Virus record (IMG/VR): IMGVR_UViG_3300021197_001489
Span: 186,001-250,000 of that record
DNA: 64,000 nt
Direction: 5' to 3' (one strand)
Shown here: positions 8,842 through 48,432 of the stretch, piece after piece
Layout of the letters: each line of letters starts with the position of its first letter
Position numbering within the stretch: the first letter of the stretch is position 1
Program-made: the position numbers and the translations under genes
Notes under the pieces: generated by a model
Databases searched by the model: none
What the model saw: the letters and a program-made list of their open reading frames with translations, nothing else
What the model was told of the DNA's origin: nothing

Positions 8842-9405
8842 ATGACTCCAGAAATAATTATCCCTAGTCAGTTATGGCTGATTAGGGATTTCTTTCCCCT
8901 AGAGCAATATTCTTTTGTTCGCAAACTATATCGCAATGCAGAAAACAACAAACTCAAAATGCTCTACGACAACCGTTTATTAACGGATTGGAGTGAGACT
9001 CGAGAGCCCAATGACATTTGTGCAGTGTGGGCACCGTATTTTAGCGAACTTGCTGGTATTGATCTAAAGCCGCAAGTGGGCTATGTTGACATTACGTTAT
9101 CGCATGCAAAAATCATGATGCATAGAATACACAGTAATATTAAACTGCAAGTACAAATACCACTATGCACACAAGCAGCAGACACCAACCAGTATGCGTT
9201 TTGTATTGAAGATGCAGTTAACACTGCTACTGGGGAGAATGATCATAGCCCTGCTCGTGCTATTGAAAGTAGTGAATGTGTGTATGTGCCACACGAGCCG
9301 CGCAGTGCTATTGTATATCTGAACAATCCAAGGATTTTCAATGGTATGATGAATCCAATACCTGAAAACAGCATCCGCGAAACGCTGTGGCTTAACTATC
9401 AGTGA
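8842..9405 (+). CDS. 2OG-Fe(II) oxygenase-fold protein with degenerate metal triad
   Basis: Aligns by eye with 9392-9895 and 44133-44756 but has HRI for HxD and N for the distal His. Confidence 0.55.
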   Translation: MTPEIIIPSQLWLIRDFFPLEQYSFVRKLYRNAENNKLKMLYDNRLLTDWSETREPNDICAVWAPYFSELAGIDLKPQVGYVDITLSHAKIMMHRIHSNIKLQVQIPLCTQAADTNQYAFCIEDAVNTATGENDHSPARAIESSECVYVPHEPRSAIVYLNNPRIFNGMMNPIPENSIRETLWLNYQ

Positions 9406-9895
9406 CGTTGTATTGAAACACCACACTAGTTCGTGTGCCATTGCTAGCAATAACTTGATGTTCTTTTAGGTCTGTGTTTAAATTCAAGTAACCGCAGTTT
9501 GGCTCAATTGGTATTTGTATACTTGGATCAACATGCAAGAACTCTGCACCAACTGTATCGCCGTCATTGTCAATGTATACTTGTAGTGTAACAGCGATAT
9601 CAGCAGCATCGTGATGTACTTGGCAACCAAAGCCGGGCAGGTCTAACCAAAATTTACTAACCATAAAGTTTAAATTTTGGCCTGTTAGTTTATCGAGCCC
9701 TGGTACTAGGTCAAGCCCAACTTGTTGTAGTCTTCGGTGATCATTGCTGTCTTGTAACAGCATGCGCAAATGAGGCCGCGTTACCGAAAAGCTGTTATCC
9801 GTATTGGTCTTAATATCCTTTAACCAAATCAGTGTGTCTGGATCAAAGCAGTCCTTGACAATCCATAAATTAGATGCTATATTAAACGTATTCAT
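9392..9895 (-). CDS. 2OG-Fe(II) oxygenase
   Basis: VHHD...LQVY...NCGY...H...RTS pattern; TAAATA-N5-ATG start. Confidence 0.7.
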   Translation of the reverse strand: MNTFNIASNLWIVKDCFDPDTLIWLKDIKTNTDNSFSVTRPHLRMLLQDSNDHRRLQQVGLDLVPGLDKLTGQNLNFMVSKFWLDLPGFGCQVHHDAADIAVTLQVYIDNDGDTVGAEFLHVDPSIQIPIEPNCGYLNLNTDLKEHQVIASNGTRTSVVFQYNVTDS

Positions 9896-9980: not shown

Positions 9981-10073
9981 GTGTATGTTAGGCTATACAC
10001 AGATGCGTAGTAGCGCATCACAGGCAAATGATAGAGTAGTAGTTGCTACTCGTAGGCACATAGGAGAAATAAA
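9981..10073 (+). promoter_or_regulatory. Structured gp32 5' leader: three tandem hairpins and AGGCA repeats (putative translational operator)
   Basis: Hairpins 9981-10000 (loop TTAGGC), 10002-10019 (loop TAGTAG), 10034-10051 (loop TAGTTG); SD AGGAG. Confidence 0.65.
10022..10063 (+). repeat. 42-bp element, copy 1 (perfect inverted copy at 44022-44063)
   Basis: AGGCAAATGATAGAGTAGTAGTTGCTACTCGTAGGCACATAG is identical to the reverse complement of 44022-44063. Confidence 0.97.
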
Positions 10074-11060
10074 ATGGCTTCATTAGCAGAAATCCGCGCA
10101 CGCCTTGCAGCGGCAGATAACAGACAAGGCAATCAGTCATCCGGTGGTGATGGCGCAATTTATCCACATTGGAATATGAACGAAGGCGATAGTGCAGTGC
10201 TACGCTTCCTTCCTGATCTGGATACAACTAATACGTTCTTCTGGATTGAACGTGCAATGATTAAACTTCCTTTCAATGGCATTAAAGGGCAAATGGATAG
10301 CAAAAGCATCCAGGTGCAAATTCCTTGTATTGAGATGTGGGGCGAGACTTGTCCAATCCTCACAGAAGTACGCACATGGTTTAAGGACAAAAGTCTTGAA
10401 GATATGGGTCGCAAGTATTGGAAAAAGCGTTCATATATCATGCAAGGTTTTGTGCGCGAAAACCCAATTGCTGATGACAAAAGCGAAAAAGCGATCCGAC
10501 GCTTTATTATTGGTCCTCAGATTTTCCAGACTATCAAGTCAGCATTGATGGACCCAGAGTTGGAAGAACTTCCAACTGATTACGAGCGTGGTTTAGACTT
10601 TCGCGTAAGTAAAACACAAAAAGGTGGATACGCTGACTATTCCACAAGCAAGTGGGCTCGCAAAGAGACTCCACTTACTGCACAGGAAGCAGAAGCAATT
10701 GAATCACAAGGTTTGTATAACCTAGGTGATTTCTTGCCAAAGCGTCCAAGCGAAGAAGATCTCCGTGTAATGAAAGAGATGTTTGAAGCAAGCGTTGACG
10801 GACAAAGCTATGACGCAGAGCGTTGGTCTAACTACTTCCGTCCAGCGGGTATGCAGAAGCCTGAAGGTTCCTCCGGCTCAGCACCAGCACCACAGGCAGC
10901 ACCTGCACCAGCAGCACCCGCAGTAAAAGAAGATGTTCCTTTTGAAGTTGCACCAGCAACGCCAACTGCTCCAGTTGAAGCACCTGCTCCAGCAGCAGAT
11001 AGCAGCAACAAAGCAGAAGACATACTTGCTATGATTCGTAGCAGACAGTCTGCATCTTAA
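10074..11060 (+). CDS. gp32: Single-stranded DNA-binding protein (T4 gp32-like)
   Basis: AVLRFLP, C...CPI, YWKKRSY, G.DF...K...GGYADYSTSKW; Pro/Ala linker; adjacent to uvsX. Confidence 0.9.
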   Translation: MASLAEIRARLAAADNRQGNQSSGGDGAIYPHWNMNEGDSAVLRFLPDLDTTNTFFWIERAMIKLPFNGIKGQMDSKSIQVQIPCIEMWGETCPILTEVRTWFKDKSLEDMGRKYWKKRSYIMQGFVRENPIADDKSEKAIRRFIIGPQIFQTIKSALMDPELEELPTDYERGLDFRVSKTQKGGYADYSTSKWARKETPLTAQEAEAIESQGLYNLGDFLPKRPSEEDLRVMKEMFEASVDGQSYDAERWSNYFRPAGMQKPEGSSGSAPAPQAAPAPAAPAVKEDVPFEVAPATPTAPVEAPAPAADSSNKAEDILAMIRSRQSAS

Positions 11061-40911: not shown

Positions 40912-42314
40912 CTGATTACACATATGACGTACAAAAATTATTCCTAGAGATGATAATGCAAGATGCAGAAAGCTATCTGCGTGTGCAAAATATTTTCAAT
41001 GTGGAAAACTTTGACAGAGACTTACGCGATGCAGCCGAGCTTATTTACAACCACGCTGACCAACACAAAACACTTCCAGAACGCTCGCAGCTAAAAGCAG
41101 TAACAGGTACTGACTTGCTGGAGATTCCAGATCTCAATGAGGGCCACACTGATTGGTTTTTGGGAGAGTTTGAAGCATTTACTAGGCGCAGTGAACTAGA
41201 ACGAGCTATCTTAAAAAGTGCAGACTTGCTAGAAAAAGGCGAGTATGACCCAGTTGAAAAGCTAATCAAGGACGCAGTGCAAATAAGTTTAACAAAAGAC
41301 TTGGGCACAGATTATTTTGAAGATCCGAGAGCAAGACTTGCAGCACTCAAAGACAATAACGGACAGAACAGTACTGGCTGGAACAACTTAGACAAGTTGT
41401 TGTATGGCGGATTTAACAGAGGCGAACTACAGATATTTGCTGGCGGCTCTGGATCGGGTAAAAGTTTGTTTATGCAAAACCTAGCAGTGAACTGGATGGA
41501 AGCTGGACTAAGCGGAGTTTACATTACACTTGAATTAAGTGAAGGTTTGACTGCTATGCGTATTGATAGTATGTTGACAAATACGCCAAGTAAACAGCTA
41601 TTCAAAGATCTAGATACTGTTGAAATGAAAGTAAAGATGATGGGCAAGAAAGCAGGAGGTCTGCAAATAAAGTACATGCCTGCACAAAGCAACGTCAATG
41701 ACATAAGAGCATTTGTAAAAGAACTAAGCATCAAACAAGGCAAAAGCATAGACTTTATGTGCATTGACTACTTGGATTTGCTTATGCCAGTAAGTGCTAA
41801 GGTATCGCCAAATGATCTGTTTGTGAAAGACAAGTATGTATCAGAAGAACTGCGTAACTTGGCAAGAGAACTTAACATACTGTTTGTTACAGCATCTCAG
41901 CTGAACAGAGGTGCTGTAGAAGAAGTAGAGTTTGATCACAGTCATATATCTGGTGGTATTAGCAAGATCAATACTGCTGACAATGTGTTTGGTATCTTTA
42001 CAAGCAGAGCAATGCGTGAAAGAGGACGTTATCAACTACAGCTAATGAAGACCAGAAGTTCAAGCGGTGTTGGAATGAAAGTTGATTTGGAGTTTGATGC
42101 TGAAAGTTTGCGTATACGTGACTTAGGAGATGATGAAGAGTATCAACAGTTTAAGAAACAATCAAGTTCGATTTATGATCAAATAAAAGCAAAGTCGCTT
42201 GTAACAGACAGCGAAACAGAAGCAACTGTGGCGGATGAGCCTGGCAAGATTGTTGCTGACGTACAAAGCACAAAACTTAAACAGATGTTAGCTGGCATTA
42301 AGCAAAAAGGTTAA
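40908..42314 (+). CDS. gp41: Replicative DnaB-like helicase (T4 gp41-like)
   Basis: STGW..LD, GGSGSGKS, YITLE, IDYLDL, TASQLNR, MKTR. Confidence 0.93.
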   Translation: MTDYTYDVQKLFLEMIMQDAESYLRVQNIFNVENFDRDLRDAAELIYNHADQHKTLPERSQLKAVTGTDLLEIPDLNEGHTDWFLGEFEAFTRRSELERAILKSADLLEKGEYDPVEKLIKDAVQISLTKDLGTDYFEDPRARLAALKDNNGQNSTGWNNLDKLLYGGFNRGELQIFAGGSGSGKSLFMQNLAVNWMEAGLSGVYITLELSEGLTAMRIDSMLTNTPSKQLFKDLDTVEMKVKMMGKKAGGLQIKYMPAQSNVNDIRAFVKELSIKQGKSIDFMCIDYLDLLMPVSAKVSPNDLFVKDKYVSEELRNLARELNILFVTASQLNRGAVEEVEFDHSHISGGISKINTADNVFGIFTSRAMRERGRYQLQLMKTRSSSGVGMKVDLEFDAESLRIRDLGDDEEYQQFKKQSSSIYDQIKAKSLVTDSETEATVADEPGKIVADVQSTKLKQMLAGIKQKG

Positions 42315-44005
42315 GCATACTGATCAATAGGCATTGCTTTTACGTTCTTGCGTTTTACTTTTAAAAAGTTGCTGTTGTCTTTGGTCCACATTTGTCCTTC
42401 GCCAACTATAACACTGTTACGAGCATACTTCACAGGACGGTCGACCACAAGATCAACATAACGCCCTTCGCCAACACCCAGTGTTATAAAATGTATGTAA
42501 TTTTTACTATCGCTTTTAAACACTCTACTGTTTGCTACTATTCCGGCAAACTGAAACTTGTCTAAAAACAAGTTTTGCAATCCCATGTTTGGCAAAAAGC
42601 CAGGGCTGTTCCATGCACCGTGCTCTTTGAAACTCTCAACAGGATCTTCTGTGATCCAGTTGTCAAAGCCTAAGTCACGTAGATCCCAGCCAGCACGTTT
42701 TGCTTCGTTGCGATATACCCAACGTGCATATGATCCTTGACAGTGCTTCAAGCAAGCACGCCAAAATTCTTTTGGATTGTGTACTTTATGATATGCCAAC
42801 GCCCATATAAGTCTACCCAAGTTAACTGCGTGTGCTCGGCACAAGCCAAATCCACTTAGGCTTTGCATTTGTTCGTAGATGTCATGCTTGTCTGGATGAT
42901 CACCTAGTTTTGCCATAAACTGCATCATCTTTTCTTCGTTCTTTTTGGCAAATGCTCGTCTGTACATGTCCGCTTCATAGGGATTGATGCCAATCAGTTT
43001 CATTATTTTGTGTATGGCATCGTCTTCATATACTATGGCATTCTTTTGTATGCCTTTTTCACTCCAGTCACGGAACCAACTGGCCTTGCGTCTACCTTCC
43101 ATAGCAACAGGACGTACCAAAGCACTAGCAAACACACAGTCTTCGACTCCTGTTGGCTGCAACGCTCGGAACAGTCTTTTCATGGTCGGCGATTCACCTT
43201 GTGTGACACCAAGTACATCGCCTCTGCACAACAAGTCACTGACTGCTTCATCTTGTTTTGGATATGAGTCTAGTCTTGTGTGAGGATCTATTTCTAATAG
43301 CTGTGATAATCCTCTGTTGGCCAGTATATCTACTTTCAAATGTTCCAGGTCTTCAACTTCGTTTTTGTCTAACAGTATGAGATTGTCGTCACGGAATAGA
43401 CTTTTGGGTAATGCTCTGTCAAACACAAGCACACCCCCACAGTGCTTGCTTATGCAACGTTTCTTGCCCATTAATTTGCGTTCAATGCGTTTTGCTTCTT
43501 TTTCGTCGACACCCAGTTTTGCATAATCTATGTCTTTTGGCAATCTGCCTTTTGCACCTAGACGTTTTGCTGCTTCGCGTTTTGCACTCTTTTCTCTGTA
43601 AAGCACATAGTTTGATATCCTGGCACTCTGTGTTGGCCATTTATCAAATACACGTTGCATTGCAAGTTCTTGTTTGTGATGCGGTATATCAATATCCACA
43701 TCAGGCAAGTCGTCTCTGTGTGGGTTTAAGAAACGTGCCAGTGGTATGTTCCACTCAATCGGATCAACATCAGTTATGCCCATGAGGTAGCAAACCAAAC
43801 TGCTACCAGCACTGCCGCGTGTCATGTGTGGTATGTCACTGTTGAGATCAAGTATAAGTCTTATTTTGAGAAAGTAATCTGTAAAACGCTGCTGAAGTAT
43901 AATTTCAAATTCTTCTGCTAGTCTATCTTGATATTCGTTGCCTACAGGAGTAGGTCTTCTAAATTGTTCTAATAATAATTCTATTTGCTCTAGTTCTGTT
44001 TTCAT
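42311..44005 (-). CDS. dnaE: PHP-less family-C DNA polymerase (DnaE-like), 564 aa
   Basis: RGSAGSSLVCYLMGITDVDP, PDVDID, KHCGG, KVDIL, QGES, ALVRP, GLCRAHA, C-terminal OB-like strands. Confidence 0.9.
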   Translation of the reverse strand: MKTELEQIELLLEQFRRPTPVGNEYQDRLAEEFEIILQQRFTDYFLKIRLILDLNSDIPHMTRGSAGSSLVCYLMGITDVDPIEWNIPLARFLNPHRDDLPDVDIDIPHHKQELAMQRVFDKWPTQSARISNYVLYREKSAKREAAKRLGAKGRLPKDIDYAKLGVDEKEAKRIERKLMGKKRCISKHCGGVLVFDRALPKSLFRDDNLILLDKNEVEDLEHLKVDILANRGLSQLLEIDPHTRLDSYPKQDEAVSDLLCRGDVLGVTQGESPTMKRLFRALQPTGVEDCVFASALVRPVAMEGRRKASWFRDWSEKGIQKNAIVYEDDAIHKIMKLIGINPYEADMYRRAFAKKNEEKMMQFMAKLGDHPDKHDIYEQMQSLSGFGLCRAHAVNLGRLIWALAYHKVHNPKEFWRACLKHCQGSYARWVYRNEAKRAGWDLRDLGFDNWITEDPVESFKEHGAWNSPGFLPNMGLQNLFLDKFQFAGIVANSRVFKSDSKNYIHFITLGVGEGRYVDLVVDRPVKYARNSVIVGEGQMWTKDNSNFLKVKRKNVKAMPIDQYA

Positions 44006-44021: not shown

Positions 44022-44063
44022 CTATGTGCCTACGAGTAGCAACTACTACTCTATCATTTGCCT
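44022..44063 (-). repeat. 42-bp element, copy 2, in the dnaE 5' leader
   Basis: Identical in sense to gp32 leader 10022-10063; ends 16 nt before the dnaE ATG. Confidence 0.97.
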
Positions 44064-44072
44064 TAATAGGTA

Positions 44073-44104
44073 TATTTACTCCAAGAAATATGCTACTATA
44101 AATA
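44073..44104. promoter_or_regulatory. Divergent late promoters (TAAATA minus strand 44073-78; TATAAATA plus strand 44097-104)
   Basis: Match to the T4 late consensus and to the motif recurring across the window. Confidence 0.6.
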
Positions 44105-44132
44105 TTTGCAGTTAGAAGGATAATAGATCGCT

Positions 44133-44756
44133 GTGATAGATCAAAATTTAATCAACGAAAATACTAACAGTATTATTCAATCATTGACTAATGGCTTCGA
44201 ACATGACAAAGGATTTATAGAACTTTACAATATAAATTGCAGTCTTGCAGCAGAAAAATTAGATCATTATCTTGCAACTGTGCCAGAAGACCAATGGATT
44301 CCTGAAACAACCACTAAAAAAGATAAAAACGTAAATCTGAGAAAAAAAATAAATTGGCAAAGTGATAGCATAATAGAAGAACTGCACCTTAGTTACGAAG
44401 CAGTAACTCCAATTATCAATCAACTTTTTACCCAAACCAAAGAGAAAGTTTTTATTGGATTAAATGTTTGGCAAGATATCGAAGGCTATAGAATGCCTAT
44501 GCACACTGATAATCCTATAATTGCAGTAGCATTACAAGCCTATCACGGTAATACTGCACCTGAAGATTGTGGTACAAGTTTTTGTGTGCAAGATTGTATC
44601 ATTGAAATACCGTACAAACACAACAATGGTTATATTCTTGAACAGTCTGATGATTTAACAAAACGCCTGTTACATGCACCTAGCAAAACTACACCTGCAG
44701 AAGCAAAACGTCAAAGCATTTATGCAGTATGGAGCTACCCAGAATTTAAGGATTAG
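44133..44756 (+). CDS. 2OG-Fe(II) oxygenase
   Basis: WQD..GY.M.MHTD..ALQ.Y, GT.F, NNGY, H, RQSIY. Confidence 0.72.
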   Translation: MIDQNLINENTNSIIQSLTNGFEHDKGFIELYNINCSLAAEKLDHYLATVPEDQWIPETTTKKDKNVNLRKKINWQSDSIIEELHLSYEAVTPIINQLFTQTKEKVFIGLNVWQDIEGYRMPMHTDNPIIAVALQAYHGNTAPEDCGTSFCVQDCIIEIPYKHNNGYILEQSDDLTKRLLHAPSKTTPAEAKRQSIYAVWSYPEFKD

Positions 44757-45570
44757 TATCGTAATAGGAGTTGATTAACGATCCAATTCCCACTAGTTTT
44801 TCTTGATCTTTAACAACGTGAATAATTTTTGTTGGTTGCAAATTGAGTTGTTTACAAATTTCTTGGTGTGCTTTTCCGTATGTGTTCCAGTGATAGTCTC
44901 TAGGTATGCTGTTAATAATATGGTAGCCTGCACTAGCAACATTGATATTTGTTGTTGGATAATAATGATTGAGCATGGTTATGCTATCCATACGCCGTTG
45001 CCTAGACCACCTAAGGCCGCAGCGATTCCAGTCATTGGCATACTTGCTTAAACTCATTGCAACGCTTTTTATGCAAGGATGCGATAAATCAAGTTCAAAA
45101 TCCTTGCCAGCTAGCAGCCAAGCACAATCCAAATGTACATCAATGTTTTTTTGTTCGCATTCAAGTAAAATATCATTCCAGTCTTTGCGAATGTCAAGAT
45201 ATCTCCACTGCGGAATACTTACTAGCAACGGTACACCTGGTTCGAGATCACCCGGGTGCGTGGTGTTTATACCCATATAAGTGTATACACTATAATCATC
45301 AGGCAATACCTGAATTTTCCAGCCGTGAGCTCCTGCTGTGCTTTCAATAAAGTGTGTACACCCCAGTGTAAAATCAACACAGTCAAACTTATCCCAGCCG
45401 TGTACAGTGTTTAATTGTGTGCTTTTAAACCATTCGTCGGCTGCTGGGACAAAGGCTTTCATTGACAATGATTTATGTCCTTTGGCAAACCAATCTTGTT
45501 GAACACCAATTAGTAATTTATCTTTTATTGGGTTAAATCTGTTGTATTCTAAATTGTCACGAGTATACAT
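44746..45570 (-). CDS. PLP-dependent (fold I) aminotransferase/decarboxylase-like protein
   Basis: VHLDCAW, SLSK, R.G; TAATG coupling at 45570. Confidence 0.7.
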   Translation of the reverse strand: MYTRDNLEYNRFNPIKDKLLIGVQQDWFAKGHKSLSMKAFVPAADEWFKSTQLNTVHGWDKFDCVDFTLGCTHFIESTAGAHGWKIQVLPDDYSVYTYMGINTTHPGDLEPGVPLLVSIPQWRYLDIRKDWNDILLECEQKNIDVHLDCAWLLAGKDFELDLSHPCIKSVAMSLSKYANDWNRCGLRWSRQRRMDSITMLNHYYPTTNINVASAGYHIINSIPRDYHWNTYGKAHQEICKQLNLQPTKIIHVVKDQEKLVGIGSLINSYYDTNP

Positions 45571-46037
45571 TATCTTGTACCTTTGCATAAATCAATAAGC
45601 CATTGGTAAAACAAACTACCAAATTCAAATTCCCAAGTTCCGTTATGTCCAAAAATGCATTCACCATATATTGGATTTTCTAATTCAATACCAGCTGCTT
45701 TTTGCTCACTGGCCCAAGGTTCAGGATAATCTGCGTAGTACAAACTGCGATGCCAGACAATGTCTCTCACACTTATACTGTCAATAATTACGTCTGCAAT
45801 TTTTGTGATTTGATCTTGCCCTGGTTCTTTTCCGGTCCGATTTACCGTTAATTTGTGTATTTTATTGGCATCAAGCGTTACTGTGAAATCTATGCTATGA
45901 TTGCCGTTGGGCAAAATTTCGTTGCAGAAACTTTGTTCGTTGAGCAAAATTTCTACCTTTGGCGCAGCGTCAGTGTAGGCACTGTCAAATACAACGCTTA
46001 CTGCAACAGTTTCTTGGATAATAGGATTTAAGTCCAT
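45570..46037 (-). CDS. Hypothetical protein
   Basis: Overlap-coupled in operon; YPEPWA..GHNGTW motif. Confidence 0.65.
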   Translation of the reverse strand: MDLNPIIQETVAVSVVFDSAYTDAAPKVEILLNEQSFCNEILPNGNHSIDFTVTLDANKIHKLTVNRTGKEPGQDQITKIADVIIDSISVRDIVWHRSLYYADYPEPWASEQKAAGIELENPIYGECIFGHNGTWEFEFGSLFYQWLIDLCKGTR

Positions 46038-47074
46038 TCGTCTATTATATATACTCCGTTACTGCCACGATCTGGCCAATAGTCTTCGCAAGGACCAACT
46101 CGATAAATGTCTGATGTACAACAATGAATTCCTGCATCCCAGTAATACTTGGTTTTAAAATCACTGACATGCGCATTGACACCAATGCTCTCCAAATACT
46201 TAGCAGTGCTGTCATTCAGTGCGCTTACTATTATGGTGTTTTCGTCGACGGCTAAGTTGTTTACATCAAACACTGTTTCTTCAGGCATACCAATCCACTC
46301 TTCGCTAATTGAAAGTAATTGCTCGTTGTATGCTGCATAATCAACGCCTGGTAACCACCAACGTTGTCCCACCCCGTGAAACTTTGGTACAACATTTTTT
46401 AAAAAGTATACATTCCAATTTGGAAAACTTTGTTGATAGGTTTGCTGATAGTGCGAACTTATCATATGTCCTGGCTTAAATGGAAAAAAGATTCCATCCT
46501 GATGGTCGCCTGTAGTACTAAGATGCACTCGATAATCCGCACTAAGTTTTTCAGCAAAAAGGTAAGCATTTACTTTTCTTTCGGCCACTGTTGGATCATA
46601 GTCTATAATAATATCTTTGCCGGCTCGCACCACACACGGAAATTCGACCCAGGCTATTGGGTCTTGATCACGGTCTGTGATTTTTACTTTTTGCCCATTG
46701 GCTCGATAACGATCAATTGCATGTTGATACGGATCTATTCCACTATGATATTGCGGTAAGACATGCAGTGTATCGTTTAGAGTTAGAGAAAAATCACAAG
46801 GAGATATTGGAGGTTTACCCAAGCGGTCTTCGTTGTCTAGATAATCGTCAACACGGTTAAACTGCGGTTCAACAACGCTTACACCTAATTGCTCAAGTGT
46901 GTTGCGTAATACCTTAAAATCTTCTCTAGTCAATTCATTTATGTGGCAAAAAATATCTTGTATTTTAGCTGAGTAATGATCAAAAAATTTATCAGGATAT
47001 ACACCGCCAATCCAAACTTCTTTTAGCGATTGCCATTGACTGTGACTAGAAATTTTGCTATACTGTGTATGCAT
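46028..47074 (-). CDS. Amidinotransferase (glycine/inosamine-phosphate amidinotransferase family)
   Basis: SH.QW..LKEVWIG, P.D, HQDG, FDVN, WDAGIHCCT. Confidence 0.82.
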   Translation of the reverse strand: MHTQYSKISSHSQWQSLKEVWIGGVYPDKFFDHYSAKIQDIFCHINELTREDFKVLRNTLEQLGVSVVEPQFNRVDDYLDNEDRLGKPPISPCDFSLTLNDTLHVLPQYHSGIDPYQHAIDRYRANGQKVKITDRDQDPIAWVEFPCVVRAGKDIIIDYDPTVAERKVNAYLFAEKLSADYRVHLSTTGDHQDGIFFPFKPGHMISSHYQQTYQQSFPNWNVYFLKNVVPKFHGVGQRWWLPGVDYAAYNEQLLSISEEWIGMPEETVFDVNNLAVDENTIIVSALNDSTAKYLESIGVNAHVSDFKTKYYWDAGIHCCTSDIYRVGPCEDYWPDRGSNGVYIIDEWT

Positions 47075-47156
47075 CAAGTATTTACATATGTAACATAACC
47101 AGGCAATTTATTATTTAAAAAGCTACATGCGATAAATACTTCAAAGGGATAAAGCA

Positions 47157-47417
47157 ATGCAAAAAAAGACTCGTAGCATCTTTGAAGAACTTGATGGTAT
47201 CTACACTGAACGTCACAGCAATCTGGCAGAACGCAAGTACATTGTGGAAAGCCGTGCAAGCAATGTTATTGTTAGTGCCGTACGTCTGATGGAACAAATC
47301 GAAGAGCTTTACGATACCGAGCAAGCTGAAAATCTGCACCGTAAATTGCTAAATGCAATTCGCCTGCGTGACCCTAACAAATTTTCAAGGTCAGTGAGAC
47401 GCGCAGATGAGAAGTAA
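47157..47417 (+). CDS. Conserved hypothetical (virion module)
   Basis: TAAATA 47133-38 upstream; clean ORF. Confidence 0.7.
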   Translation: MQKKTRSIFEELDGIYTERHSNLAERKYIVESRASNVIVSAVRLMEQIEELYDTEQAENLHRKLLNAIRLRDPNKFSRSVRRADEK

Positions 47418-48432
47418 TGAACAACTGGTACAAGAAGCATTGCTAGCACAACTTAGCGAATATCAGCATCAACAACAGCAACAATTAGATGAAATCAATC
47501 CCTTCACTGGTGCTGCTAAAGCAGCTGGTGCAGTTTCGGGTGCAGTTAAAGGCGCTGGACAAAAAGTCGCAGGCACAGCAAAACGTGCAAAAAGTGCAAT
47601 AGGACAAGCCTATCAACAAGGACAAACTGGCGCACAAAAAGCAGTAGCCGGACAGGACTACAAAGCACCGGCAGCAAGACCAGCAGCCAGCGCAGCAAAA
47701 GCTGGTGGTTCTGCTGTAATGAAAGGCCTACAAGGTCTCGGGCGTGGCATTGGGGCATTAGGTGACCTCAAAGACAAAGTTGACGCATACGATGTTTCAA
47801 AAGGAACTGCTCTCCAGCAACGAGCTAGTGCTAATAACCTTACAGTGGCTCAGCAAAAACAAAAAGAAAAAGATGAAAAAGATGCCAAAGACAAAGCAGC
47901 AACGCCACAAGCACAGGCTGAACTTAAACGTAAACAAGACTTAGAAGCACAACTAGGAACAACTGGCGCAGCGGCCGCAGCTGGTAATGCTGCTGCTAAT
48001 GCTGCTAGGACAACAGCTCAAGCTGATAATAAGGCCATTAACAAAAGCATTGCTCGGCAACGAGCAAAAGTTGGTGCAACAGGCGTGCCAGGTCAAAAAT
48101 CAGCAAGCACTGGCACAACTCCAACTGCAACGCAAGTACCTGGACAACAACCAGCAAGCAGTGGCACAACCACAACAGCAAGCGGTCGTCCCGTAAATGT
48201 TAACGTTAACACTCCAAAAGCACAAAGTGACACAGCAAAAGATATTGCAGCAAAGACTGGCGCCACTGCTACAGCCAAGCAACCCAATTTAAAAATTGCT
48301 GGACAAAAAGTCAAGCCCGGTGATCCACTTTATGATAAGTTGGTTGCAATGATCCCAGCAGAAACACGTTCCAGTATCGATGGACTCAGCGACTTTGAAA
48401 AAGGCAGACTGAAAAAGGAGCTGTCAGCATGA
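47407..48432 (+). CDS. Ala/Lys/Gln-rich low-complexity putative internal head protein
   Basis: LDE|I cleavage-like site followed by a basic low-complexity region. Confidence 0.6.
   Translation: MRSNEQLVQEALLAQLSEYQHQQQQQLDEINPFTGAAKAAGAVSGAVKGAGQKVAGTAKRAKSAIGQAYQQGQTGAQKAVAGQDYKAPAARPAASAAKAGGSAVMKGLQGLGRGIGALGDLKDKVDAYDVSKGTALQQRASANNLTVAQQKQKEKDEKDAKDKAATPQAQAELKRKQDLEAQLGTTGAAAAAGNAAANAARTTAQADNKAINKSIARQRAKVGATGVPGQKSASTGTTPTATQVPGQQPASSGTTTTASGRPVNVNVNTPKAQSDTAKDIAAKTGATATAKQPNLKIAGQKVKPGDPLYDKLVAMIPAETRSSIDGLSDFEKGRLKKELSA

What the first reader, a model, noticed from the sequence alone, without database searches (positions are those of the whole stretch)
44133..47084. Oxygenase + PLP enzyme + amidinotransferase cassette: possible guanidino-modification pathway in a phage
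Seen in sequence: a coupled minus-strand operon of amidinotransferase (catalytic-type HQDG and GIHCC), a hypothetical protein and a PLP fold-I enzyme (DxA, SLSK). It converges on a 2OG-Fe(II) oxygenase, and each end has a TAAATA promoter. Established: oxidation, transamination and then amidino transfer is the logic of streptidine synthesis. Inference: the phage may build a guanidinylated sugar or amino acid late in infection, to decorate virion proteins, glycans or the host surface.
Basis: partly seen in the sequence, partly recalled or inferred. Interest (0 to 1): 0.6.

Follow-up and report, generated by a model that had tools for sequence, protein, structure and literature searches.

The report
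Phage amidinotransferase, PLP enzyme, oxygenase module
A marine jumbo phage carries a conserved, almost virus-only set of four genes (an arginine amidinotransferase, a stripped-down vitamin-B6 enzyme with a small partner protein, and an iron/2-oxoglutarate-oxygenase-like protein) that probably makes a guanidino compound late in infection; what that compound is, or what it decorates, is unknown.

Summary
Window 44133-47077 contains four real genes.
- **ORF-D** is an AGAT/StrB1-type amidinotransferase. A family profile matches AGAT at 1e-20, the fold matches at 1e-18, and the Cys-His-Asp triad is invariant.
- **ORF-C** is a 155-aa protein seen only in viruses.
- **ORF-B** is a minimal 274-aa PLP fold-type-I enzyme. 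Its model aligns to class I/II aminotransferases at Z about 16, and the Asp and the S-x-S-K lysine are invariant.
- **ORF-A** converges on the operon and is 2OG/Fe(II)-oxygenase-like. HxD...H...RxS is invariant across 71 relatives, but its fold was not tested.

No curated family model recognises any of the four.

The genes travel together in shuffled orders in many viral contigs, in a fixed slot between DnaB and the virion genes of a jumbo myovirus lineage. B is the constant member. Within 5 kb of B, A is present in 60 of 78 loci, C in 53 and the amidinotransferase in 39. B is nearly absent from cellular genomes.

TAAATA-type motifs mark structural genes genome-wide and flank the cassette.

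The best reading is a late-expressed tailoring route: oxidation, then PLP-dependent amine formation, then arginine-dependent amidination. The acceptor is unresolved. B resembles amino-acid enzymes rather than sugar aminotransferases, yet the genome's two other amidinotransferase paralogues lie among nucleotide-sugar genes. Known DNA-hypermodification entry enzymes are absent.

The parts
44097..44104 (+). TATAAATA late-type promoter motif, 36 nt upstream of ORF-A
   Evidence: Read directly. ATAAATA is enriched 14.5-fold upstream of ORFs. It typically lies 25-35 nt before the start codon of virion genes.
44133..44756 (+). ORF-A, 207 aa, 2OG/Fe(II)-oxygenase-like protein (H124-x-D126, H181, R193-x-S195)
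   Evidence: The motif residues are invariant in 15 close relatives and in 71 distant ones. The nearest language-model neighbours include 2OG-FeII_Oxy_3/4 clusters. The family profile hits S-SCSM2R ORF267, which passes Pfam PF13640, and hhalign aligns all three motifs at E 0.0035. The fold was not predicted.
44746..45570 (-). ORF-B, 274 aa from the ATG at 45570 (the ORF is open to 45588): a minimal PLP fold-type-I enzyme of the class I/II aminotransferase kind
   Evidence: AF2 model pLDDT 92.6. All Foldseek hits are PLP fold-type-I enzymes. VIA gives Z about 16 with 250-260 residues aligned to C-S lyases, AspAT, HisC, CobD and ACC synthase. G76, T78, D154, S179, S181, K182, R189 and R193 are invariant.
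45570..46037 (-). ORF-C, 155 aa, virus-only protein of unknown fold, translationally coupled between D and B
   Evidence: Overlaps read. A C homologue lies within 5 kb of B in 53 of 78 B loci, nearly always immediately upstream on the same strand. No Pfam, PDB or atlas family was found. Conserved YPEPWA, GHNGxW and SPFY motifs.
46028..47074 (-). ORF-D, 348 aa from the ATG at 47074 (a TTG lies at 47077): L-arginine-type amidinotransferase with D95, D155, H192, D194 and C319
   Evidence: A family profile matches AGAT at 1.2e-20, and also SxtG, StrB1 and HsvA. AF2 pLDDT 89.9. The top Foldseek hits are amidinotransferases at 1e-18, against 1e-8 for arginine deiminases. The catalytic residues are invariant.
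47078..47085 (-). GTAAATAC promoter-like motif just upstream of ORF-D; a second TAAATA lies at 47112-47117 on the same strand
   Evidence: Read. Seven of the 8 genomic GTAAATAC copies lie within 80 nt upstream of an ORF. It sits closer to the start codon than the usual 25-35 nt.

Best explanation
The four genes form one virus-specific enzymatic module. It is expressed from late-type promoters and converts a small-molecule position into a guanidino group in three steps.
1. ORF-A is an Fe(II)/2-oxoglutarate-type oxygenase that oxidises a carbon of the substrate. In some relatives a radical-SAM/SPASM enzyme stands beside it or in its place.
2. ORF-B is a minimal PLP enzyme of the class I/II aminotransferase fold, probably working with its coupled partner ORF-C. 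It produces the primary amine, by transamination of the new carbonyl or by decarboxylation of an amino acid.
3. ORF-D takes the amidino group of L-arginine onto Cys319 and passes it to that amine, releasing ornithine.

**Shown here:** the gene structure, the family and fold of D and B, the conserved catalytic residues, the co-occurrence of the genes, and the promoter motifs.

**Inferred:** that A is a true oxygenase, the order of steps, arginine as donor, and a small-molecule acceptor.

My split for the acceptor is roughly 35-40% an amino-sugar or cyclitol-type compound, 35% an amino acid or polyamine, about 15% a macromolecule (DNA or virion protein), and the rest something else.
For: **ORF-D (amidinotransferase)**
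- A family profile hits only amidinotransferases in the PDB, at 1e-20 to 1e-15.
- The fold ranks amidinotransferases ten orders of magnitude above the hydrolases of the same superfamily.
- D155, H192 and C319 align with AGAT D254, H303 and C407. D95 and D194 align with the guanidinium-binding D170 and D305 (AGAT numbering recalled from memory).

**ORF-B (PLP enzyme)**
- The model is confident and PLP fold type I.
- The invariant residues fit the PLP-binding pattern: G-x-T phosphate loop, Asp at a strand end, S-x-S-K, then Arg.
- Twelve of 32 family members give weak Pyridoxal_deC hits.

**ORF-A (oxygenase-like)**
- The HxD...H...RxS spacing is invariant down to 20% identity.
- It links weakly to PF13640.

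**Linkage between the genes**
- 15 of the 17 amidinotransferases in ORF-D's clade lie beside B, and B-linked amidinotransferases occur in at least 5 clades.
- In 78 B loci, A is within 5 kb in 60, C in 53 and the amidinotransferase in 39, in at least seven different gene orders.
- Amidinotransferase-oxygenase coupling recurs independently in cyanophage S-SCSM2R, where the two genes overlap.

**Oxidise-then-transaminate logic**
- Radical-SAM/SPASM genes share the slot.
- In a Bacteriovoracaceae MAG a B homologue overlaps a radical SAM gene whose best solved matches include anaerobic sulfatase-maturating enzymes.
- Campylobacter phage amidinotransferases sit among radical SAM genes, one annotated BtrN.

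**Late timing**
- The promoter motif is shared with portal, sheath and baseplate genes.
- The S-SCSM2R amidinotransferase, and a neighbouring protein that the record annotates as a 2OG oxygenase (no Pfam hit here), were detected in purified virions (PMC12801897).
Against: - No enzyme activity, substrate or product is known for any member of these families.
Curated models barely see it: 1 of 71 members hits PF13640 at E 0.009, and hhalign probability is only 9%.
- The amidinotransferase is absent within 5 kb in half of the B loci. So amidination may be an optional add-on rather than the purpose of the module.
- B is 80-150 residues shorter than characterised class I/II enzymes. No sequence profile links it to them, and its Lys/Asp mapping rests on motif position rather than a residue-level superposition.
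- 2OG oxygenases usually hydroxylate rather than produce a carbonyl for transamination.
- RNA-library contigs cover parts of A, B and C but not D, and DNA carry-over cannot be excluded.
Confidence: 0.5

Rival explanations
1. An amino-acid or polyamine route rather than a sugar route. B decarboxylates or transaminates an amino acid such as Lys, Orn or Arg, A hydroxylates it, and D amidinates the amine. The product would be an agmatine- or homoarginine-like cation used as a DNA counter-ion in the large capsid or as a metabolic effector. This is a sub-case of the best explanation with a specified acceptor.
For: - The nearest folds to B are all alpha-amino-acid enzymes: C-S lyases, AspAT, HisC, CobD, ACC synthase and the arginine oxidases RohP and Plu4. 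No DegT sugar aminotransferase is in the top 50.
- Twelve of 32 B family members give weak Pyridoxal_deC hits.
- The polyamine amidinotransferase HsvA is among the top matches to D.
- The cassette holds no nucleotide-sugar gene.
Against: - The Z-scores of the B matches are tied within 1 unit, so the subfamily is not resolved.
- The AGAT R322 position, which binds the substrate carboxylate, is Q211 in this protein although it is R in most relatives (AGAT numbering from memory).
- The other amidinotransferase paralogues and many viral relatives lie beside sugar genes.
Confidence: 0.3
2. Post-replicative DNA hypermodification. An amino acid or amine tethered to a base is processed by the PLP enzyme, as in the thymidine hypermodification pathways, and is then guanidinylated by D to protect or condense the genome.
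For: - The module abuts DnaB, primase and a DnaE-like gene.
- PLP and radical SAM enzymes that act on DNA-tethered amino acids are known from phage thymidine hypermodification (my recollection of Lee et al. 2018, not checked here).
- Radical SAM genes share the slot.
Against: - The 91%-complete genome has no match to TGT/DpdA, Thymidylat_synt (hydroxymethylase type), HMUDK_hel or Tet_JBP.
- The promoters are of the virion-gene type, not the TTGAC-N17-TATAAT class found elsewhere in the genome.
- ORF-A is closer to P4H-type 2OG oxygenases than to TET/JBP.
Confidence: 0.08
3. Direct modification of virion proteins. The oxygenase hydroxylates residues and the amidinotransferase converts lysine side chains to homoarginine on capsid or tail proteins.
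For: - The promoters are late and the module sits beside the structural block.
- The S-SCSM2R amidinotransferase, and a neighbouring protein annotated as a 2OG oxygenase, were found in CsCl-purified virions.
- PF13640-type oxygenases are often protein hydroxylases (general knowledge).
- ORF-A paralogues lie next to a virion structural gene.
Against: - No known amidinotransferase acts on proteins; their active sites are narrow channels (general knowledge).
- A PLP enzyme, the most constant member of the module, has no obvious role in protein modification.
Confidence: 0.07
4. There is no common pathway. The genes are independent accessory genes that accumulate in a hypervariable slot between the replication and structural modules.
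For: - The slot also takes up unrelated cargo: a DnaE-like fragment, radical SAM genes and unknown ORFs.
- The amidinotransferase occurs alone next to DnaB in L017 and L018, and with quite different partners in other phages.
Against: - C-B and D-C are translationally coupled.
- B, A, C and the amidinotransferase stay adjacent through at least seven rearranged orders and in a second genomic context, loci L147-L177.
- B-linked amidinotransferases are found in at least 5 clades.
Confidence: 0.08

Closest known systems
L-arginine amidinotransferases (AGAT 1JDW, StrB1 1BWD, SxtG 6U1R, HsvA 5WPI)
   Same: Same fold, the same Cys-His-Asp triad and the same two guanidinium-binding Asp residues. These are the best profile and structure matches.
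   Different: - Only 14-19% identity.
- Not recognised by Pfam, NCBIfam or named PHROGs.
- A virus-wide family: at least 579 viral contigs encode relatives.
- The acceptor is unknown.
- The AGAT R322 position is not conserved in this copy.
Class I/II PLP aminotransferase family (C-S lyases MalY/PatB, AspAT, HisC, CobD, ACC synthase)
   Same: Fold-type-I core with Z about 16 over 250-260 residues. D-x-A and S-x-S-K...R motifs.
   Different: - Only 274 aa against 360-420.
- 7-14% identity.
- No sequence-profile link.
- Usually paired with a 155-aa partner (ORF-C) that has no counterpart in the known enzymes.
- Almost confined to viruses.
2OG-FeII_Oxy_3 (PF13640, prolyl-4-hydroxylase-like) oxygenases, e.g. 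cyanophage S-SCSM2R ORF267
   Same: HxD...H...R motifs align. As in the window, the gene is coupled to an amidinotransferase gene.
   Different: The statistical link is weak (E 0.0035, probability 9%), no fold model was made, and the substrate is unknown in both.
Aminocyclitol logic of streptidine and 2-deoxystreptamine synthesis (dehydrogenase or BtrN, then StsC/BtrS aminotransferase, then StrB1)
   Same: The same order of chemistry is plausible: oxidise, transaminate, amidinate. Radical-SAM/SPASM genes and StrB1-like enzymes co-occur in relatives.
   Different: - The aminotransferase here is not of the DegT/StsC family.
- The oxidant is an oxygenase-like protein.
- The cassette holds no cyclitol or sugar synthase and no kinase or phosphatase.
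Radical SAM plus amidinotransferase clusters of Campylobacter phages CP220 and CPt10 (PMC2853527), and the amidinotransferase loci of cyanophage S-SCSM2R (PMC12801897)
   Same: Phage-borne amidinotransferases of the same family with oxidative partner enzymes. Function is unknown in the literature too.
   Different: Those loci have no B or C homologue. They correspond better to this genome's second amidinotransferase cluster at 76-98 kb.

Membership tests
Amidinotransferase (AGAT/StrB1 family, guanidino-group-modifying 'pentein' superfamily) | Five-fold pseudo-symmetric pentein fold | tested here: met
   AF2 model pLDDT 89.9. Foldseek probability is 1.00 and TM 0.64-0.67 to SxtG, StrB1, AGAT and HsvA.
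Amidinotransferase (AGAT/StrB1 family, guanidino-group-modifying 'pentein' superfamily) | Catalytic Cys-His-Asp triad and two guanidinium-binding Asp residues | tested here: met
   C319, H192, D155 and D95/D194 are invariant in 31 sequences. They align to the AGAT motifs GFHC, HID, RAGRD and PRD.
Amidinotransferase (AGAT/StrB1 family, guanidino-group-modifying 'pentein' superfamily) | Closer to transferases than to the deiminase and hydrolase branches | tested here: met
   The profile hits only amidinotransferases. Foldseek gives 1e-18 for transferases against 1e-8 for deiminases and DDAH.
Amidinotransferase (AGAT/StrB1 family, guanidino-group-modifying 'pentein' superfamily) | Recognised by a curated family model | tested here: not met
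   No Pfam or NCBIfam hit for the single sequence. Only phrog_25854, of unknown function, matched.
Amidinotransferase (AGAT/StrB1 family, guanidino-group-modifying 'pentein' superfamily) | Arginine-dependent amidino transfer to an amine | not testable with these tools
   Needs an enzyme assay.
PLP fold-type I, class I/II aminotransferase family | Fold-type-I large domain plus C-terminal small domain | tested here: met
   pLDDT 92.6. All 500 Foldseek hits at E below 0.001 are of this fold. VIA gives Z 15-16 with 250-260 residues aligned.
PLP fold-type I, class I/II aminotransferase family | Schiff-base Lys and pyridine-N Asp in their canonical places | tested here: inconclusive
   K182 (in S-L-S-K) and D154 (at the strand end, D-x-A-W) are invariant and lie 28 residues apart on adjacent strands. 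No residue-level superposition was available. hhalign to the genome's own DegT enzyme places D154 on its D-A motif, but at E 0.44.
PLP fold-type I, class I/II aminotransferase family | Recognised by sequence profiles (Aminotran_1_2 or the PDB) | tested here: not met
   No Pfam hit for the protein itself. Twelve of 32 relatives hit Pyridoxal_deC at E 0.0076 or weaker. There were no PDB profile hits.
PLP fold-type I, class I/II aminotransferase family | Full-length architecture of about 360-420 aa with an N-terminal arm | tested here: not met
   B is 274 aa. Model residues 11-278 span chain residues of about 29-377 with many deletions.
2OG/Fe(II)-dependent oxygenase | HxD/E...H iron triad and a basic residue for the 2OG C5 carboxylate | tested here: met
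   H124, D126, H181 and R193 are invariant, and S195 is at least 90% conserved, in 71 sequences down to about 20% identity.
2OG/Fe(II)-dependent oxygenase | Double-stranded beta-helix fold | not tested
2OG/Fe(II)-dependent oxygenase | Significant similarity to a curated 2OG family | tested here: inconclusive
   - PF13640 was hit by 1 of 71 members at E 0.009.
- PF13640 found no match in the phage's own genome.
- The family profile scores 22 bits on S-SCSM2R ORF267, which itself passes PF13640 at 29.5 bits.
- hhalign gives E 0.0035 and probability 9%.
- Atlas feature neighbours carry PF13640 and PF13661.
Streptidine-type aminocyclitol pathway | DegT/StsC-family aminotransferase and a cyclitol or sugar-forming enzyme in the cluster | tested here: not met
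   B is class I/II-like, with no DegT enzyme in the top 50. There is no sugar or cyclitol gene between DnaB and the virion genes. Such genes lie only with the paralogue at 76-98 kb.
Known phage DNA hypermodification systems | An entry enzyme: DpdA/TGT, hydroxymethylase (TS-like), 5-hmdU DNA kinase or TET/JBP | tested here: not met
   No match in the 91%-complete genome.

The most novel reading that the evidence does not exclude
The module writes a guanidino group onto a macromolecule or its precursor. The target could be a virion glycan or protein, or the packaged DNA. This would be a new kind of viral hypermodification, carried out by a virus-only PLP enzyme with its own small subunit and spread through marine and freshwater jumbo phages.
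Probability: 0.2. Interest if true: 0.85.

Novelty: new variant of a known kind. Interest (0 to 1): 0.6.

Why it matters
Hundreds of viral contigs carry these families: at least 579 encode an amidinotransferase relative and 275 encode a B relative. The window stretch itself is found in marine metagenomes from 12 studies. The papers found here give no function for any phage amidinotransferase.

The module combines three well-understood chemistries in enzymes too divergent for curated models to recognise. The PLP enzyme and its partner are almost confined to viruses. Working out the product would:
- add a new metabolic capability to phages;
- explain a recurrent set of "hypothetical" genes in jumbo phages, cyanophages and Campylobacter phages;
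- possibly reveal a new guanidino natural product or virion or DNA modification.

The minimal 274-aa fold-type-I enzyme is also of interest for enzymology.

Tried and rejected
**Searches that found nothing or too little**
- Single-sequence Pfam, NCBIfam and PHROG scans of the four proteins found only one PHROG of unknown function, for D.
- DNA similarity to deposited phage genomes: none.
- PDB profile searches for B, A and C found no meaningful hits.
- PF13640 against the phage's own genome: no match.
- hhalign of B against the genome's own DegT enzyme found only a 22-column local match at E 0.44.

**Ideas checked and dropped**
- Neighbours of the S-SCSM2R and CP20 amidinotransferases are not B or C homologues by BLAST or HMM.
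- A suspected C-B fusion, suggested by odd offsets, was rejected. No ORF carries both domains. The offsets came from over-extended ORF starts.
- A contig joint 44109->47156 in run X5 would delete the cassette. Only 21 letters fit on its shorter side, and it most likely reflects similar late promoters in a more abundant relative. I do not count it as a deletion variant.
- Metatranscriptome evidence is weak. Only contigs are held, they cover parts of A, B and C but not D, and DNA carry-over cannot be excluded.

**Jobs that could not run**
- The atlas structure library was unavailable.

Full report
**1. What is there**

The window is part of a 316,012-bp virus record that CheckV rates 91% complete. 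It is a jumbo myovirus with tail sheath, baseplate wedge and portal genes. The genome runs almost entirely on the plus strand. The finding is one of its few minus-strand islands.
- ORF-D is at 46028..47077, ORF-C at 45570..46037 and ORF-B at 44746..45588, all on the minus strand.
- ORF-A at 44133..44756 lies on the plus strand and converges on ORF-B.
- D and C overlap by 10 nt.
- The C stop and B start form TAATG. This sets the B start at the ATG at 45570, giving 274 aa, as in a 99%-identical database protein.
- The 3' ends of A and B overlap by 11 nt.
- On one side lie primase, DnaB and a minus-strand DnaE-like fragment. On the other lie an 86-aa virion protein and a DUF6267 protein.

**2. 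Family assignments**

None of the four proteins is recognised by Pfam, NCBIfam or a named PHROG.

*ORF-D, amidinotransferase.*
- A profile of 31 relatives (alignment A1) hits only amidinotransferases in the PDB: AGAT at 1.2e-20, then SxtG, StrB1 and HsvA.
- The AlphaFold model has pLDDT 89.9.
- Foldseek ranks those same four enzymes at about 1e-18. Arginine deiminases, DDAH and agmatine deiminases follow at about 1e-8.
- The invariant D155, H192 and C319 align with the AGAT catalytic residues. D95 and D194 align with its guanidinium-binding aspartates (AGAT numbering is from my memory).

*ORF-B, PLP enzyme.*
- The model built on 32 relatives has pLDDT 92.6.
- Every significant Foldseek hit is a PLP fold-type-I enzyme.
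- VIA-align gives Z 15-16 with 250-260 of 280 residues aligned. The matches are class I/II aminotransferase-family proteins: C-S lyases, AspAT, kynurenine aminotransferases, HisC, CobD, ACC synthase, and the arginine-oxidising RohP and Plu4.
- No DegT-type sugar aminotransferase is in the top 50.
- The invariant residues G76, T78, D154, S179, S181, K182, R189 and R193 fit the phosphate loop, the pyridine-N Asp, the S-x-S-K lysine and the phosphate Arg of that family. That pattern is recalled from memory.
- I could not obtain a residue-level superposition.
- B is 80-150 residues shorter than its structural relatives.

*ORF-A, oxygenase-like.*
- In 15 close relatives, and in 71 relatives from the exhaustive search (391 hits at E 1e-3 or better), H124, D126, H181 and R193 are invariant. 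S195 is nearly invariant. This is the iron triad and 2OG-binding RxS spacing of 2OG oxygenases.
- Sequence statistics are weak. One of 71 members hits PF13640 at E 0.009.
- The family profile scores 22 bits on cyanophage S-SCSM2R ORF267, which itself passes PF13640.
- hhalign aligns all three motifs at E 0.0035 but with 9% probability.
- Language-model neighbours include PF13640 and PF13661 clusters.
- I rate the assignment at about 0.7. The fold was not tested.

*ORF-C.* It belongs to large virus-only clusters and has no recognisable family.

**3. Do the genes belong together?**

*Starting from the amidinotransferase.*
- At least 579 viral contigs encode relatives.
- In the 80 best loci, close relatives of D (46% identity or more) carry C and B downstream, with A convergent. 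Some instead have the same-strand order A-D-B without C.
- More distant relatives have other partners:
  - radical-SAM/SPASM enzymes;
  - a 143-aa protein with a near-threshold match to the arginyl-tRNA-protein transferase C-terminal domain, together with a 166-aa partner;
  - nucleotide-sugar epimerase/dehydratases;
  - an NAD-synthase-like protein.

*Starting from B.*
- 275 viral contigs encode relatives.
- In 78 loci, an A-family gene lies within 5 kb in 60 and C in 53, nearly always immediately upstream on the same strand. The amidinotransferase lies within 5 kb in 39.
- At least seven gene orders occur: D-C-B|A, C-B-D, B-D, A-D-B, D-A-B, C-B-A, and C-B|A without D.
- Nearly all sit in the same slot between DnaB and the small virion gene plus DUF6267. 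A second lineage has a different context.

*Phylogeny and distribution.*
- On a quick maximum-likelihood tree, ORF-D lies in a clade of 17 sequences (SH-aLRT 99), of which 15 are next to B. B-linked amidinotransferases appear in at least five clades.
- B is almost absent from 185,579 cellular species genomes. There were three hits. One is on a short, probably viral contig. Two are in Bacteriovoracaceae MAGs. In one of those MAGs the B gene overlaps a radical SAM gene whose best solved matches include anaerobic sulfatase-maturating enzymes.

Co-occurrence through rearrangement, translational coupling and independent recurrence support a common function. The recurrence includes the overlapping amidinotransferase and 2OG oxygenase genes of S-SCSM2R. 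The caveat is that B, usually with A, is the core. The amidinotransferase is a frequent member of the module, not a universal one.

**4. Timing**

- ATAAATA is the most enriched 7-mer upstream of ORFs in this genome: 30 windows against 2.1 expected.
- 31 of its 47 copies lie within 80 nt upstream of ORFs, mostly 25-35 nt before the start codon.
- The genes it precedes include portal, tail sheath, baseplate wedge, decoration or fibre, and other virion genes.
- A separate set of 29 genes has TTGAC-N16-19-TAnnnT sites.
- ORF-A has a perfect TATAAATA 36 nt upstream.
- The operon has GTAAATAC 11 nt before its TTG. Seven of the 8 genomic copies of that octamer are upstream of ORFs. A second TAAATA lies farther up.
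- The resemblance to the T4 late promoter is from general knowledge. Late expression is inferred, not shown.
- Two marine metatranscriptome libraries hold contigs over parts of A, B and C but not D. This cannot prove transcription.
- In cultured cyanophage S-SCSM2R, the amidinotransferase and a neighbouring protein annotated as a 2OG oxygenase were detected in purified virions. That fits high late expression (PMC12801897).

**5. Mechanism**

The best-supported reading has three steps.
1. An oxidative step is carried out by A, or by radical SAM enzymes in relatives.
2. B, perhaps with C as a subunit, forms a primary amine.
3. D transfers an amidino group from arginine through the Cys319 thiouronium intermediate.

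The radical-SAM associations add some support, because radical SAM dehydrogenases followed by aminotransferases are the 2-deoxystreptamine logic (general knowledge).

The acceptor is open.
- *For a sugar or cyclitol:*
  - The genome has two more amidinotransferase paralogues.
  - One lies in a 76-98 kb cluster with an epimerase/dehydratase, a DegT aminotransferase, a GFO-type oxidoreductase, a carbamoyltransferase and at least five radical SAM genes.
  - The other lies beside a UDP-glucose-dehydrogenase-like gene and a cupin hydroxylase-like gene.
  - Viral relatives abut epimerase/dehydratases.
  - The S-SCSM2R gene lies by KdsA and KdsB.
- *For an amino acid or polyamine:*
  - B's nearest folds are all amino-acid enzymes.
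  - Weak decarboxylase hits occur in the B family.
  - HsvA is among the matches to D.
  - The cassette itself has no sugar gene.
- *Against DNA hypermodification:* TGT/DpdA, TS-like hydroxymethylase, 5-hmdU DNA kinase and TET/JBP are all absent.

**6. Comparison with what is known, and novelty**

- D is a member of the amidinotransferase family. All defining sequence and fold features that I tested were met, apart from recognition by curated models.
- B has the class I/II aminotransferase fold and cofactor motifs, but it is a truncated, virus-specific outlier.
- A works like a 2OG oxygenase by its motifs, but membership is unproven.
- The module is not a streptidine pathway. It lacks the DegT/StsC aminotransferase and any cyclitol or sugar enzyme.
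- In the papers I found, phage amidinotransferases are only noted as annotations in Campylobacter phages and in S-SCSM2R, without function. The one BFVD family member is "uncharacterized".
- I class the finding as a new variant of a known kind: known chemistries in an undescribed, virus-specific combination.
- Interest is 0.6. It is widespread, testable and of unknown product, but nothing here shows a new principle.

**7. Limits**

- There is no fold for A or C.
- There is no complex prediction.
- There is no residue-level superposition for B.
- Contigs are fragments, so "no amidinotransferase within 5 kb" does not mean the genome lacks one.
- The tree is the quick version.
- AGAT residue numbers and the class-I motif are recalled from memory.

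Noticed in passing
G000:C1:76000-98000 (outside the window; loci L007, L100, L102, L105, L106): A second amidinotransferase paralogue (83449-84474, E 8e-77 to the ORF-D profile) lies in a large cluster. The cluster holds an NAD epimerase/dehydratase, a DegT aminotransferase, a GFO-type oxidoreductase, a carbamoyltransferase, at least five radical SAM genes and a weak GT2 hit. It mirrors the 'five radical SAM plus amidinotransferase' clusters of Campylobacter phages CP220 and CPt10, and the AHBA_syn, radical SAM and amidinotransferase trio of S-SCSM2R.
   Followed up: partly
G000:C1:270007-273988 (locus L008): A third, more divergent amidinotransferase paralogue (271825-272745). It follows a UDP-glucose/GDP-mannose-dehydrogenase-like gene and a 174-aa protein with a weak Asp/Arg-hydroxylase hit.
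   Followed up: partly
window 44022-44063 and window 10022-10063 (inverted): An exact 42-nt repeat (about 44 nt in the alignment) containing a hairpin. It lies 10-20 nt upstream of the start codons of two replication genes: the minus-strand DnaE-like gene (42311-44005) and a gp32-like gene (10074-11060). It may be a shared 5' regulatory element. It also explains the depth spike and loose ends in the read layout.
   Followed up: partly
window 42311-44005 (-): A 564-aa DNA polymerase III alpha fragment with the NTPase and finger domains but no PHP domain, on the minus strand between DnaB and the cassette. Homologues come and go in the same slot in related phages (clusters c59 and c35).
   Followed up: no
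window 8842-9405 (+) and 9392-9895 (-); G000:C1:69888-70457: Three paralogues of ORF-A (family-profile E 8.5e-6, 5e-26 and 2e-18). Two of them form a convergent pair right after a virion structural gene that carries the late motif.
   Followed up: partly
whole genome G000: Two promoter-like classes are present. ATAAATAC precedes virion genes. TTGAC-N16-19-TAnnnT precedes 29 mostly small genes, often as GGTTGAC...TATAATG.
   Followed up: partly
viral loci L035, L055, L064, L066-L068, L073, L075, L079, L080, L087, L089: Another recurrent trio in other phages: a 166-aa protein, a 143-aa protein with a near-threshold match to the arginyl-tRNA-protein transferase C-terminal domain (PF04377, 24 bits against a cut-off of 25), and an amidinotransferase, all on one strand.
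   Followed up: no
L186:4833-6873 (Bacteriovoracaceae MAG, 230-kb contig): One of the very few cellular homologues of ORF-B overlaps a radical SAM gene whose best solved matches include anaerobic sulfatase-maturating enzymes. There is no amidinotransferase, A or C nearby.
   Followed up: partly
window 47407-48432 (+): A 341-aa Ala/Gln/Lys-rich low-complexity protein directly after the 86-aa virion protein, with no family hit. It may be a scaffold or internal protein.
   Followed up: no
window 44109 / 47156 (run X5): One abundant contig joins 21 letters ending at 44109 (the ORF-A promoter) to the start of the 86-aa virion gene at 47156. This would skip the whole cassette. The short side makes a similar promoter in a relative more likely than a true deletion variant.
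   Followed up: no
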